DNA of 63,997 bases, the filler included, from Octopus bimaculoides (taxonomy: Eukaryota): NCBI RefSeq assembly GCF_001194135.2. It is 6 parts of 6 records of this genome, joined end to end, with 100 filler letters (N's around TTAATTAATTAA, not from the genome) between each part and the next. Parts side by side here need not be neighbours in the genome. Positions count along the whole stretch, not along the records: positions 47,824 to 53,214 come from NC_069009.1; 5 more parts are not named here. One strand, given 5' to 3'. The notes beneath the pieces were generated by a model. It was not told the origin of the DNA and searched no databases. It saw only the letters and a list, made by a program, of their open reading frames with translations. Positions within the stretch are counted from its first letter, which is position 1. Every line of letters starts with the position of its first letter. A program made the translations under genes and the position numbers. Shown piece after piece: positions 48,720 through 50,762 of this stretch.

Positions 48720-48851
48720 ATAATCACAGTGGGAGGCACAACTGGCTGGAGCCCCAACAGTACAGACATCAGCAATTTATCCATTGTCCAGGGAGACATG
48801 TTAGGGTTTGTCTATGGAGCCACAGAGAATGTCATCTTACTGAAGGATAAG
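48720..48851 (+). CDS. Exon A of phytocyanin/ENODL-like cupredoxin-domain membrane protein (phase 0-0, 132 bp)
   Basis: Long polypyrimidine tract ...ttttctcAG|, donor AAG|gtgagt; encodes IITVGGTTGWSPNSTDISNLSIVQGDMLGFVYGATENVILLKDK. Confidence 0.85.
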
Positions 48852-49895
48852 GTGAGTTAGACTGGATTCTTCTCTTCCTCTACGGGCTTCTTTCAGTTTC
48901 CGTCTACCAAATCCACTCACAAGGCTTTGGTCGGCCCGAGGCTATAGTAGAAGACACTTGCCCAAGGTGCCACGCAATGGGACTGAATCCAGAACCATGT
49001 CNNNNNNNNNNNNNNNNNNNNNNNNNNNNNNNNNNNNNNNNNNNNNNNNNNNNNNNNNNNNNNNNNNNNNNNNNNNNNNNNNNNNNNNNNNNNNNNNNNN
49101 NNNNNNNNNNNNNNNNNNNNNNNNNNNNNNNNNNNNNNNNNNNNCTCTACGGGCTTCTTTCAGTTTCCGTCTACCAAATCCACTCACAAGGCTTTGGTCG
49201 GCCCGAGGCTATAGTAGAAGACACTTGCCCAAGGTGCCACGCAATGGGACTGAATCCAGAACCATGTCGTTCGTAAGCAAGCTAGTTACCACACAGCCAC
49301 TCCTACGATTATAATAATAATTATATATTATTATCTATATTGATTTCAAATTTTGGCTCAAGGTCAGTAATTTCAGGGAAGGGAGGGATAAATCAACTGG
49401 AATTTAAGTTATCGGCCCCAAAAGGATGAAAGGCAAAAATCAACCTCAGTGGAATTTGAACTCAGAACTTGAAGCCGGATGAATTGGTGCTAAGCATTTC
49501 ACCCTGTGTCCTAATGGTTCCGCCAGCTTGCTACATTATGTTATTGTATAAAAGGCACTCCGTCGCTTACGACGTCGAGGGTTCCAGTTGATCCGATCAA
49601 CAGAACAGCCTGCTCGTGAAATTAACGTGCAAGTGGCTGAGCACTCCACAGACACGTGTACAGCATCCCCTGCCGGAGCCTCGTAGGGCTTTAGGTGTTT
49701 TTCGCTCAATAAACACTCACAACACCCAGTCTGGGAATTGAAACCATGATCCTATGACCGCGAGTCCGCTGCCTTAACCACTGGACCATTGCGCCGCCAC
49801 TTTATTGTATATATTGGTATGCAACCAATATATTATTTCTCCTGTCTATCAATCTATTAATTATCTCTTTCTCTCTCTCTCTCCCCTATTTACAG

Positions 49896-50070
49896 GACCA
49901 CTTCCAGAGATGTGACTTCACTGACAGCCGACCTATAGGTAACAAACTACTGCCGTCAGAGAGTAAAGGCACAGTTCTACACCCGTTTCCCAAACCTGGA
50001 ACATTTTACATTGCGTCACAGTCTTCCTGCAATTCCACGCAGCCCCTGAAAATGGTCTTGACAGTTATTG
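49896..50070 (+). CDS. Exon B of the same gene (phase 0-1, 175 bp)
   Basis: ...cccctatttacAG|, donor TG|gtgagt; encodes DHFQRCDFTDSRPIGNKLLPSESKGTVLHPFPKPGTFYIASQSSCNSTQPLKMVLTVI. Confidence 0.85.
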
Positions 50071-50541
50071 GTGAGTTCAGTTGATCCCTTTTTTTGCACT
50101 TGTTGCTGCTGGTGTTGGTGTTGGTGTTGTTTGCCACCATGGTGAAGGTGGTGGTGGTGGTGGTGGTGTGTAGTGGTGGGGGGTTGTAGTGGTTTGGGAT
50201 TGGAGATGTGTAGGGATAGTGGTGGTGGTGGTGGTGGTGGTGGTACCCACTACCACCACATCCACTACCGCCACAACCACTACCACCACAACCACTACCA
50301 CCACAGCCACAACCACTGCAACCACCACAGCCACTACCACCACAACCACCACAACCACTACCGCCACAACCACTACCACCACAACCACTACCGCCACAAC
50401 CACTACCGCCACAACCACTACCGCCACAGCTACTATCACCACAACCACTACCACCACAACCACTACCACCACAGCCACTACCACCACCTTAGCATCCATT
50501 CATTACAATATATTTCTTTGTCTCTCTTTCTCTATTAACAG

Positions 50542-50762
50542 ATAACATCCACCATAGCGAACAGTACACCAAATCTCATTGCCGAGACTCTGTCTACATG
50601 GTGTGGCGCCAGGCACAGTTGGACACATACCATGGAGTGGACGGGGTGGCTGCATCATTGGGCGGAGTAGTTGTCGGTCTCGTCATTCTGTCAGCTGTCT
50701 TGCTCTGGGACCGTCTTCTAAATGCTGAGTCGTCAGGAGTCAACGGATTCGAGAGATTCTAA
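50542..50762 (+). CDS. Terminal exon C of the same gene: stalk, TM helix, short tail, stop
   Basis: ...ctctattaacAG|, phase 1 matches exon B; encodes (D)NIHHSEQYTKSHCRDSVYMVWRQAQLDTYHGVDGVAASLGGVVVGLVILSAVLLWDRLLNAESSGVNGFERF*. Confidence 0.85.

What the first reader, a model, noticed from the sequence alone, without database searches (positions are those of the whole stretch)
48720..50762. Animal gene encoding a plant-type phytocyanin (early-nodulin-like) domain on a single-pass membrane anchor
Seen: three exons with strong GT-AG sites and compatible phases (0/0, 0/1, 1/stop) splice into 175 codons. The ORF track does not recover this product. Known family pattern: the domain lines up motif by motif with phytocyanins (Cu_bind_like/plantacyanin): xxVGGxxGW = IITVGGTTGW, FxxGDxLxFxY = IVQGDMLGFVY, HNV = ENV, C in FQRC, GxxYFIC = PGTFYIAS, HCxxGMK = SSCNSTQPLKM. 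Phytocyanins are regarded as a plant family. Inference: this may be an uncharacterised lophotrochozoan or cephalopod cell-surface cupredoxin. The signal-peptide exon is not securely identified.
Basis: partly seen in the sequence, partly recalled or inferred. Interest (0 to 1): 0.85.

Follow-up and report, generated by a model that had tools for sequence, protein, structure and literature searches.

The report
Octopus gene tail: copper-less phytocyanin domain
The three exons are real, but they are only the last three coding exons of a 926-residue octopus membrane protein found in molluscs and annelids, and they encode a plant-phytocyanin-type fold that has lost its copper site, sitting just above the membrane anchor.

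Summary
Exons 48720-48851, 49896-50070 and 50542-50762 splice (AG/GTGAGT, phases 0 and 1) into 175 codons plus TAA. The assembly gap lies in a repeat inside intron 1 and does not affect the coding sequence. The piece is Octopus bimaculoides chromosome CM046629.1. RefSeq already has a truncated 149-aa model (LOC106869543) that uses the same junctions. This is not a small stand-alone gene. The product is 98% identical, without gaps, to residues 752-926 of the 926-aa O. vulgaris and O. sinensis proteins. Upstream exons lie further 5' on the scaffold, and one exon is lost in a 2,566-N gap, which split the annotation. The phytocyanin call is supported: the family profile hits stellacyanin at E=2e-7, Cu_bind_like passes Pfam's threshold in four orthologues, Foldseek ranks phytocyanins first, and phmmer hits a plant ENODL directly. 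The three strong copper ligands are replaced, as in ENODLs and ephrins; the axial position is Leu or Gln depending on the loop alignment. It is not an ephrin. The full protein, found in molluscs and annelids and nowhere characterised, has an LPMO-like N-terminal domain, CHRD domains, this module and a TM helix. The likely role is a non-redox, membrane-proximal binding or scaffold module. Interest is moderate.

The parts
47824..48719 (+). 3' end of the preceding intron. The piece begins at an assembly gap. The upstream exon (O. sinensis residues 705-749, ending ...QRTQCGKSQ) is not in the piece.
   Evidence: tblastn of full-length orthologues finds no further exon here. In L002 a 2,566-N gap lies directly upstream of the piece, and the exons for residues 570-704 lie beyond it.
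48720..48851 (+). Antepenultimate coding exon (44 codons, phase 0/0): IITVGG...LLKDK, the N-terminal half of the phytocyanin-like domain.
   Evidence: Splice sites. Identical in the O. vulgaris and O. sinensis proteins. Same exon boundaries in Argonauta.
48852..49895 (+). Intron (phase 0) holding the assembly gap 49002-49144, the flanking 124-nt exact duplicate, and a SINE-like repeat at 49661-49789.
49896..50070 (+). Penultimate coding exon (58 codons plus 1 base): DHFQRC...LTVI. It encodes the C-terminal half of the domain, including the disulfide cysteines C50 and C89, the degenerate ligand loop and the conserved C-N-S-T sequon.
50071..50541 (+). Intron (phase 1) filled with (GGT)n and a 15-nt minisatellite (CCACTACCACCACAA, about 16 copies).
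   Evidence: The sub-threshold miRNA-like Rfam hits here are low-complexity artefacts.
50542..50762 (+). Last coding exon: a juxtamembrane segment with invariant C116 and a short helix, then the TM helix, a 17-residue cytoplasmic tail ending FERF, and the TAA stop at 50760-50762.
50643..50708 (+). Transmembrane helix, residues 137-158 (GVAASLGGVVVGLVILSAVLLW).
   Evidence: Maximum Kyte-Doolittle window, and basic residues after the helix in orthologues. AF2 models a helix at 137-166.

Best explanation
Window 48720-50762 holds the three 3'-terminal coding exons of the Octopus bimaculoides orthologue of O. sinensis LOC115225080 (926 aa). This is a type I membrane glycoprotein conserved in molluscs and annelids. 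The exons encode four parts. (i) A cupredoxin domain of about 100 residues that belongs by sequence to the phytocyanin/Cu_bind_like family. It has lost the three strong type-1 copper ligands (His to Glu, Cys to Ser, His to Ser/Asn). The axial position is Leu or Gln depending on how the shortened loop is aligned. It keeps the family's structural cysteine pair. (ii) A juxtamembrane cysteine and a short helix. (iii) One TM helix. (iv) A short cytoplasmic tail ending in a conserved F-x-R-F-COOH. Shown: gene identity, exon structure, purifying selection, family homology, fold, loss of the ligands and topology features. Inferred (about 50% confidence): the module carries no electrons. Like plant ENODLs and animal ephrins, it serves as a membrane-proximal binding or scaffold module that holds the distal LPMO-like and CHRD domains at the cell surface. 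The C-terminal F-x-R-F is inferred to be a trafficking or docking signal.
For: The piece is 100% identical to O. bimaculoides CM046629.1, and XP_014770817.1 equals residues 27-175 of the product. 172/175 residues match O. vulgaris residues 752-926 without a gap. Upstream exons of the same gene lie on the same strand, and one exon falls in a gap. Intron positions are conserved in Argonauta. A transcript contig carries the colinear ORF. Codon changes are 21 synonymous to 3 nonsynonymous. The exhaustive phmmer search gave 29 hits; the long ones align at their C-termini, and one direct hit is Silene ENODL6 at E=4.8e-4. The family profile hits stellacyanin 1JER at E=2.1e-7 and mavicyanin at 0.002. 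Cu_bind_like is matched by 12 of 13 members and reaches the gathering score in Haliotis (three species) and Patella. The AF2 core has pLDDT 81-96, and Foldseek's top hits are mavicyanin, umecyanin and stellacyanin.
Against: The window's own sequence scores only 12.3 bits (E=0.17) against Pfam Cu_bind_like, so membership rests on the family profile and the orthologues. Foldseek TM-scores are moderate (0.5-0.65 normalised to the target), and other cupredoxins and ephrins score only slightly worse. No partner, expression pattern or biochemical data exist, and no paper mentions the gene, so the functional statement is by analogy only. The disulfide pairing was not checked in model coordinates. O. 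bimaculoides RNA-seq reads were not examined directly.
Confidence: 0.85

Rival explanations
1. One reading: a small stand-alone gene (175 codons plus an unidentified signal-peptide exon) encoding a single-domain, membrane-anchored phytocyanin.
For: RefSeq annotates a separate 149-aa model at this spot in O. bimaculoides. A hydrophobic ATG-started candidate exon with a phase-0 GTAAAA donor exists at 48193-48276.
Against: O. sinensis, O. vulgaris, a decapodiform transcript and all gastropod and annelid orthologues are proteins of about 900 aa that are colinear through this region. Upstream exons of the same gene lie on the same strand in the O. bimaculoides scaffold. The one missing exon coincides with a 2,566-N gap, which explains the split annotation. 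The candidate exon at 48193 has no counterpart in any orthologue.
Confidence: 0.04
2. The module is a highly divergent ephrin, the known animal copper-less cupredoxin ligand with a membrane anchor, rather than a phytocyanin relative.
For: It shares the same overall fold, lacks copper ligands and has a TM anchor with a short tail, like ephrin-B. Foldseek finds ephrin-A5, -B1 and -B2 at E about 1e-3.
Against: No member matches Pfam Ephrin at E<=1, whereas 12 of 13 match Cu_bind_like. The family profile hits stellacyanin, mavicyanin and umecyanin but no ephrin among PDB sequences. The cysteine pattern is the phytocyanin pair, not the ephrin pattern. Phytocyanins outrank ephrins in Foldseek.
Confidence: 0.03
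3. The domain reached a lophotrochozoan ancestor by horizontal transfer from a plant, alga or protist and was fused to a resident gene, rather than being inherited vertically from the cupredoxins of early animals.
For: The nearest non-lophotrochozoan relatives are protist and marine-eukaryote proteins (P0014 at E=9e-8, Gromia P0017, P0018-22) and a plant ENODL. No other bilaterian phylum appeared in the 1.84-billion-protein search.
Against: It is not contamination. The exons have spliceosomal introns conserved between octopods and sit inside a multi-exon animal gene on chromosome-scale scaffolds of three Octopus species. Cupredoxins detected with Cu_bind_like and related models exist in sponges, ctenophores and holozoans (PMC6485061), so vertical descent with loss elsewhere is equally possible. 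A domain of about 100 residues at 20-35% identity cannot resolve this question here.
Confidence: 0.12
4. The module is a functional blue-copper electron-transfer domain.
For: It is homologous to type-1 copper proteins. The N-terminal domain of the same protein is LPMO-like and could need an electron donor.
Against: All three strong ligands are replaced in the window and in nearly all orthologues: E/D/T for His, S for Cys, S/N for His. The ligand loop is also shortened.
Confidence: 0.02

Closest known systems
Plant phytocyanins, especially the copper-less early nodulin-like proteins (ENODLs); structural references are stellacyanin 1JER and mavicyanin 1WS7
   Same: The same sequence family by profile: stellacyanin at E=2e-7, Pfam Cu_bind_like in orthologues, and a direct phmmer hit to Silene ENODL6. 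It shares the VGG-x-x-GW, GD-x-L-x-F-x-Y and Y-F motifs, the structural cysteine pair, the cupredoxin fold, loss of the copper ligands (as in ENODLs), and extracellular, glycosylated, membrane-tethered placement.
   Different: It is an animal (lophotrochozoan) protein. The domain is the membrane-proximal module of a multidomain protein of about 920 aa, not a small protein that follows a signal peptide directly. It is anchored by a TM helix plus a cytoplasmic tail, not a GPI/arabinogalactan region. The ligand loop is two residues shorter, and there is an extra conserved juxtamembrane cysteine.
Ephrins (ephrin-B class)
   Same: An animal, copper-less cupredoxin-fold ectodomain on a single TM helix, with a short cytoplasmic tail ending in a conserved C-terminal motif. 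The fold-level match is about E=1e-3. This is a plausible functional analogy: a binding module rather than a redox centre.
   Different: No sequence-level relationship was detected. The disulfide pattern differs. The domain is not N-terminal. No Eph-binding G-H loop could be identified.
Protist single-pass or multi-repeat phytocyanin-like proteins (unnamed; for example metatranscriptome P0018, metagenome P0022, Gromia sphaerica P0017)
   Same: These are the nearest non-animal relatives. P0018 and P0022 have the same domain-plus-C-terminal-TM layout.
   Different: They keep the His/Cys/His/Gln copper ligands and lack the LPMO-like and CHRD domains.
Membrane-tethered LPMO-like copper proteins (fungal X325/Bim1 type; the comparison rests on my own knowledge), relevant to the full-length protein only
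   Same: The full-length orthologues begin, after the signal peptide, with His and a domain whose predicted fold matches AA9, AA10 and AA11 LPMOs. The whole protein is tethered to the cell surface.
   Different: There is no sequence-level match to any LPMO family. The TM-scores are low. The N-terminal His is Asn in Biomphalaria, Physella and Bulinus. The CHRD and cupredoxin modules have no counterpart there. This domain is not encoded in the window.

Membership tests
Phytocyanin / Cu_bind_like (Pfam PF02298) | The window's own sequence reaches the family's curated profile score | tested here: not met
   12.3 bits, E=0.17, against a gathering score of 20.8. It was the only Pfam family reported.
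Phytocyanin / Cu_bind_like (Pfam PF02298) | The orthologous family is homologous to bona fide phytocyanins at profile level | tested here: met
   Haliotis P0004, P0043 and P0044 score 21.6-22.6 bits and Patella P0012 scores 20.8 bits, all at or above the gathering score. 12 of 13 members match at E<=1. The family HMM hits stellacyanin at E=2.1e-7 and mavicyanin at 0.002. UniRef names the cuttlefish orthologue 'Phytocyanin domain-containing protein'.
Phytocyanin / Cu_bind_like (Pfam PF02298) | Cupredoxin Greek-key beta-sandwich fold | tested here: met
   The AF2 core has pLDDT 81-96. Foldseek's top hits are mavicyanin, umecyanin, stellacyanin, cucumber basic protein and plantacyanin, at E 1.5e-4 to 2e-3.
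Phytocyanin / Cu_bind_like (Pfam PF02298) | Conserved structural cysteine pair (the Cys after the short helix and the Cys in the C-terminal loop) | tested here: met
   C50 and C89 are invariant in 13 of 13 members and align with the stellacyanin pair. The actual bond was not measured in the model.
Phytocyanin / Cu_bind_like (Pfam PF02298) | Type-1 copper ligands His, Cys, His and Met/Gln | tested here: not met
   The window has Glu, Ser and Ser/Asn at the three strong-ligand positions, and Leu or Gln at the axial position depending on the loop alignment. The same holds across orthologues. The ENODL subgroup also lacks these ligands, so this does not exclude family membership.
Plant early nodulin-like (ENODL) subfamily | A small secreted protein (signal peptide, then the domain, then a Pro/Ser-rich region and a GPI anchor) from a plant lineage | tested here: not met
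   Here the domain occupies residues 752-853 of a 926-aa animal protein and is followed by a TM helix and a cytoplasmic tail.
Ephrin (Pfam PF00812) | A match to the ephrin profile and the ephrin cysteine pattern | tested here: not met
   There is no Ephrin hit at E<=1 in any of 13 members and no ephrin among the PDB profile hits. Only fold-level similarity was found.
Lophotrochozoan orthogroup of O. sinensis LOC115225080 (LPMO-like + CHRD + phytocyanin-like + TM) | Colinear C-terminal module, shared intron positions, and neighbouring upstream exons of the same gene | tested here: met
CHRD domain (PF07452), in the full-length orthologues and not in the window | Profile score at or above the gathering score | tested here: inconclusive
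   It passes in Owenia (31.9 bits) and Solemya (37.1 bits) against a gathering score of 24.1, but scores 20.6 bits in O. vulgaris.
LPMO (AA9/AA10/AA11/AA15), for the N-terminal domain of the full-length orthologues and not in the window | An N-terminal His after signal-peptide cleavage, a second brace His, and the LPMO fold | tested here: inconclusive
   The mature N-terminus is H-V-R-F-V-C-P, and the His in LLDxIPH is invariant. Foldseek's top hits, about 27 of them, are LPMOs at E about 3e-4, but with TM-scores of only 0.3-0.46. There is no Pfam or PDB sequence hit. His1 is Asn in three panpulmonates.

The most novel reading that the evidence does not exclude
The full-length protein may be an undescribed lophotrochozoan cell-surface copper or oxidative machine. 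It would have a His-brace, LPMO-like head (for chitin or other glycan remodelling, or for copper capture), carried on CHRD domains and a degenerate phytocyanin stalk. Its phytocyanin-type module would be a vertically inherited relic. That would mean the phytocyanin lineage predates plants and persisted in Bilateria, contrary to the proposal that non-ephrin cupredoxins were lost early in bilaterian evolution (PMC6485061).
Probability: 0.2. Interest if true: 0.7.

Novelty: new variant of a known kind. Interest (0 to 1): 0.45.

Why it matters
The result corrects a fragmented annotation: O. bimaculoides LOC106869543 is the 3' end of a gene of about 926 codons that was split by an assembly gap. It also shows that a sequence-recognisable phytocyanin/ENODL-type domain exists in bilaterian animals as part of a conserved, uncharacterised membrane protein. 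The domain combination (LPMO-like, CHRD and copper-less cupredoxin) appears in no paper I could find. This gives a second animal example, besides ephrins, of a cupredoxin reused without its metal. It also offers a concrete family for testing how the phytocyanin lineage is distributed across eukaryotes.

Tried and rejected
(1) I proposed a signal-peptide exon at 48193-48276 (MGIISLWCW...AMK|GTAAAA, phase 0). I rejected it because orthologues continue upstream with ...QRTQCGKSQ and nothing matches that candidate. (2) The word-indexed homologue search with the 175-aa product returned nothing, although the 149-aa O. bimaculoides protein is in the collection. Only the exhaustive search opened the case. 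(3) An exact look-up of the last-exon ORF found no record. (4) Single-sequence phmmer against PDB gave only noise. (5) The N-terminal domain profile found nothing in PDB sequences, and Pfam gave only a sub-threshold Reeler hit. (6) The Rfam scan of the piece gave only sub-threshold miRNA-like hits on low-complexity inverted repeats in intron 2, and there are no tRNAs. (7) Literature searches for phytocyanin plus mollusc, CHRD plus cupredoxin, ENODL plus ephrin, and the gene and protein identifiers all returned nothing. LPMO plus CHRD returned one unrelated fungal paper. (8) I did not attempt a phylogeny to separate retention from transfer.
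Full report
OBSERVATION. 48720-48851 is preceded by ...ttttttctcag and followed by gtgagt. 49896-50070 is preceded by ...cctatttacag and followed by gtgagt. 50542-50762 is preceded by ...tctattaacag and ends in TAA. The lengths are 132, 175 and 221 nt, which gives phases 0 and 1 and a product of 175 codons.

THE GAP. The N-run at 49002-49144 lies inside the first intron, 150 nt after the donor and 751 nt before the acceptor. 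The 124 nt to its left (48878-49001) recur exactly on its right (49145-49268). In the gap-free O. sinensis locus, intron 1 is about 2.6 kb. Only the exon-proximal ends align with the window, and the interior is lineage-specific repeat. Three independent protein models read through this junction without any inserted residue. The gap therefore has no bearing on the reading frame.

WHERE THE PIECE COMES FROM, AND WHAT IS ALREADY ANNOTATED. The piece is 100% identical to Octopus bimaculoides GCA_001194135.2, chromosome CM046629.1 (L002 9027-14417). It is bounded by N-gaps on both sides.

THE PRODUCT IS A GENE FRAGMENT. Single-sequence Pfam and PDB searches were weak, and the word-indexed homologue search was empty. 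The exhaustive phmmer search gave 29 hits. The best were proteins of about 900-925 aa, and the query aligned to their last 170 residues or so. They are 'uncharacterized' proteins of Argonauta, Gigantopelta, Haliotis, Biomphalaria, Plakobranchus, Patella, Littorina, Aplysia and Solemya, and of the annelid Owenia. Later searches added O. vulgaris, O. sinensis, Acanthosepion, Lymnaea, Pomacea, Nucella, Babylonia, Physella, Bulinus and the annelid Dimorphilus.

The window's product is 172/175 identical, without gaps, to residues 752-926 of the 926-aa O. vulgaris protein. In the O. bimaculoides scaffold, exons for residues 570-704 lie upstream on the same strand. The exon for residues 705-749 is absent, and a 2,566-N gap sits exactly where it should be. 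A 574-aa gene model ends about 150 bp before the 149-aa model. The 'small gene' is therefore an artefact of an assembly gap splitting one gene of about 58 kb. For comparison, the O. sinensis gene spans 57.7 kb and the Argonauta gene 62.5 kb. My own candidate signal-peptide exon (48193-48276) is spurious.

SUPPORT FOR THE JUNCTIONS AND FOR FUNCTION. The Argonauta hians gene has introns at the same codons and phases. A 3,099-nt Logan contig from run SRR29271464 carries an uninterrupted 922-codon orthologous ORF, which means it is an assembled mRNA. Between O. bimaculoides and O. sinensis the three exons differ at 24 codons, 21 of them synonymous. Exon divergence is 4.5% against roughly 14% in the flanking intron and UTR sequence. 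This indicates strong purifying selection.

WHAT THE DOMAIN IS. A 13-member alignment of the C-terminal module (A1) has invariant W10, D26, F30, C50, C89, C116 and G144. As a profile it hits cucumber stellacyanin (E=2.1e-7), mavicyanin (0.002) and umecyanin (0.6) among all PDB sequences, and no ephrin. Pfam Cu_bind_like is matched by 12 of 13 members at E<=1. It reaches the gathering score in three Haliotis species and in Patella. The window's own sequence scores only 12.3 bits. phmmer with the window's sequence alone reaches a plant 'early nodulin-like protein 6' (Silene) at E=4.8e-4 in a library of 1.84 billion proteins. It also reaches protist proteins, including Gromia sphaerica and marine eukaryote assemblies.

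The AlphaFold model has a confident beta-sandwich core (pLDDT 81-96) followed by a short helix and a long TM helix. Foldseek against the PDB ranks mavicyanin, auracyanin, umecyanin and stellacyanin first, followed by plastocyanins, laccase domains, and ephrins at about 1e-3. UniRef already names the cuttlefish orthologue 'Phytocyanin domain-containing protein'.

COPPER SITE. I aligned the window with stellacyanin (ligand motifs AH-NV, YFVC, TH-C and GQ-K; the ligand identities rest on my knowledge of 1JER). The window has Glu, Ser and Ser or Asn at the three strong-ligand positions. The axial position is Leu or Gln, depending on how the two-residue-shorter loop is aligned. The orthologues behave the same way. 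The protist relatives P0018 and P0022 keep His/Cys/His/Gln. The two structural cysteines are invariant. The module is therefore a copper-less cupredoxin, as ENODLs and ephrins are.

TOPOLOGY. The module has three N-x-S/T sequons. One of them, C-N-x-S/T directly after the second cysteine, is conserved in 11 of 13 members. The hydrophobic segment 137-158 is the TM helix. In most orthologues it is followed by basic residues. The tail ends in F-x-R-F in 11 of 13. These features fit a type I orientation. The third invariant cysteine (C116) has a likely partner in an invariant cysteine five residues before the domain, which is encoded by the missing exon. This pairing is inferred.

THE REST OF THE PROTEIN (context; not in the window). 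The full-length alignment A2 shows a signal peptide followed by a mature N-terminus H-V-R-F-V-C-P. There is also an invariant LLDxIPH and many invariant cysteines. The AF2 model of residues 24-222 (pLDDT 73.7, pTM 0.76) finds almost only LPMOs in the PDB: AA10, AA9, AA11 and fusolin, at E about 3e-4 to 5e-3. The TM-scores are only 0.3-0.46, and there is no sequence-level support. The N-terminal His is Asn in three panpulmonate snails. CHRD passes Pfam's threshold in Owenia and Solemya and falls just below it in Octopus, at residues 641-739, directly before the phytocyanin module. I found no paper describing this architecture or these genes.

HOW IT MOST LIKELY WORKS. Shown: the module is extracellular, membrane-proximal, glycosylation-competent, disulfide-stabilised, under purifying selection and unable to bind type-1 copper. 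Inferred by analogy with ENODLs and ephrins (from my own knowledge): it acts as a binding or scaffold module, not a redox centre. It would hold and orient the distal LPMO-like and CHRD domains at the cell surface. The conserved C-terminal F-x-R-F would act as a trafficking or docking signal. I put about 50% on this functional reading and above 90% on the identity statements.

COMPARISON AND NOVELTY. By sequence the module is a member of the phytocyanin/Cu_bind_like family, of the copper-less kind. It is not an ENODL in the plant sense: it has no GPI or AGP region and is not a small secreted protein. It is not an ephrin either. The premise that the family is plant-only is too strong. Krishnan et al. 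(PMC6485061) recovered cupredoxins with Cu_bind_like and related models in sponges, ctenophores, holozoans and fungi. They proposed that functional monodomain cupredoxins were lost early in bilaterians. The present family shows that a recognisable, though copper-less and embedded, phytocyanin-type domain persisted in (or was acquired by) Lophotrochozoa. Whether this reflects vertical retention or ancient transfer cannot be decided here. Contamination is excluded by the conserved introns and the chromosomal context in three Octopus genomes.

VERDICT. The finding is a new variant of a known kind: an animal, TM-anchored, multidomain context for a copper-less phytocyanin domain. It is already present in databases as an uncharacterised protein and is partly auto-annotated. 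Interest is moderate (0.45).

Noticed in passing
L002 (O. bimaculoides CM046629.1) 1-11965; window 47824: The O. bimaculoides annotation splits one gene into a 574-aa model and the 149-aa LOC106869543. The exon for residues 705-749 falls in a 2,566-N gap directly upstream of the window piece.
   Followed up: yes
window 47896-48024 and 49661-49789; 48878-49001 = 49145-49268: There are two SINE-like repeat copies (85% identical), one upstream of the first exon and one in intron 1. An exact 124-nt duplicate flanks the assembly gap. No tRNA gene was detected.
   Followed up: partly
window 50147-50487: Intron 2 consists of (GGT)n followed by about 16 copies of the 15-nt unit CCACTACCACCACAA. Together they form a low-complexity inverted repeat. 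It draws many sub-threshold miRNA-like Rfam hits, which are artefacts.
   Followed up: yes
window 50934-52055 and 52484-53075: Downstream of the stop codon there are tandem arrays with periods of 32, 119, 98 and 101 nt, then about 590 nt of CCA/CAT-rich triplet repeat. The long 'ORFs' listed there are repeat translations.
   Followed up: partly
L001 (Argonauta hians) 60461-60529 and 78886-79059; exon at 67377-67553: The Argonauta locus carries extra near-identical copies of two exons, one of them beyond the gene's annotated end. These may be local duplication or an assembly artefact. Its IITVGG exon also holds an in-frame (AGT)n run that adds a poly-Ser loop.
   Followed up: no
Alignment A2, column of P0042 residue 24: The mature N-terminal His of the LPMO-like domain is Asn in Biomphalaria, Physella and Bulinus. 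This argues against a universally conserved His-brace copper site in the family.
   Followed up: partly
P0014 (ENA contig, 576 aa), P0018, P0022: Unnamed eukaryotic (probably protist) proteins are the nearest non-animal relatives. P0018 and P0022 have a ligand-bearing domain plus a C-terminal TM helix. P0014 has two copper-less repeats with a YFASS...C.NGLK loop that resembles the lophotrochozoan one.
   Followed up: no
The word-indexed protein search returned nothing for the 175-aa product, even though a 149-residue exact substring (XP_014770817.1) is in that collection. A negative result from that tool should not be read as absence.
   Followed up: partly
P0041 (Acanthosepion pharaonis, 1048 aa): The cuttlefish gene model contains a low-complexity insert of about 350 residues (SLLPFVSIVSV...) in place of conserved sequence. 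This is probably translated intronic repeat from a mis-predicted model.
   Followed up: no
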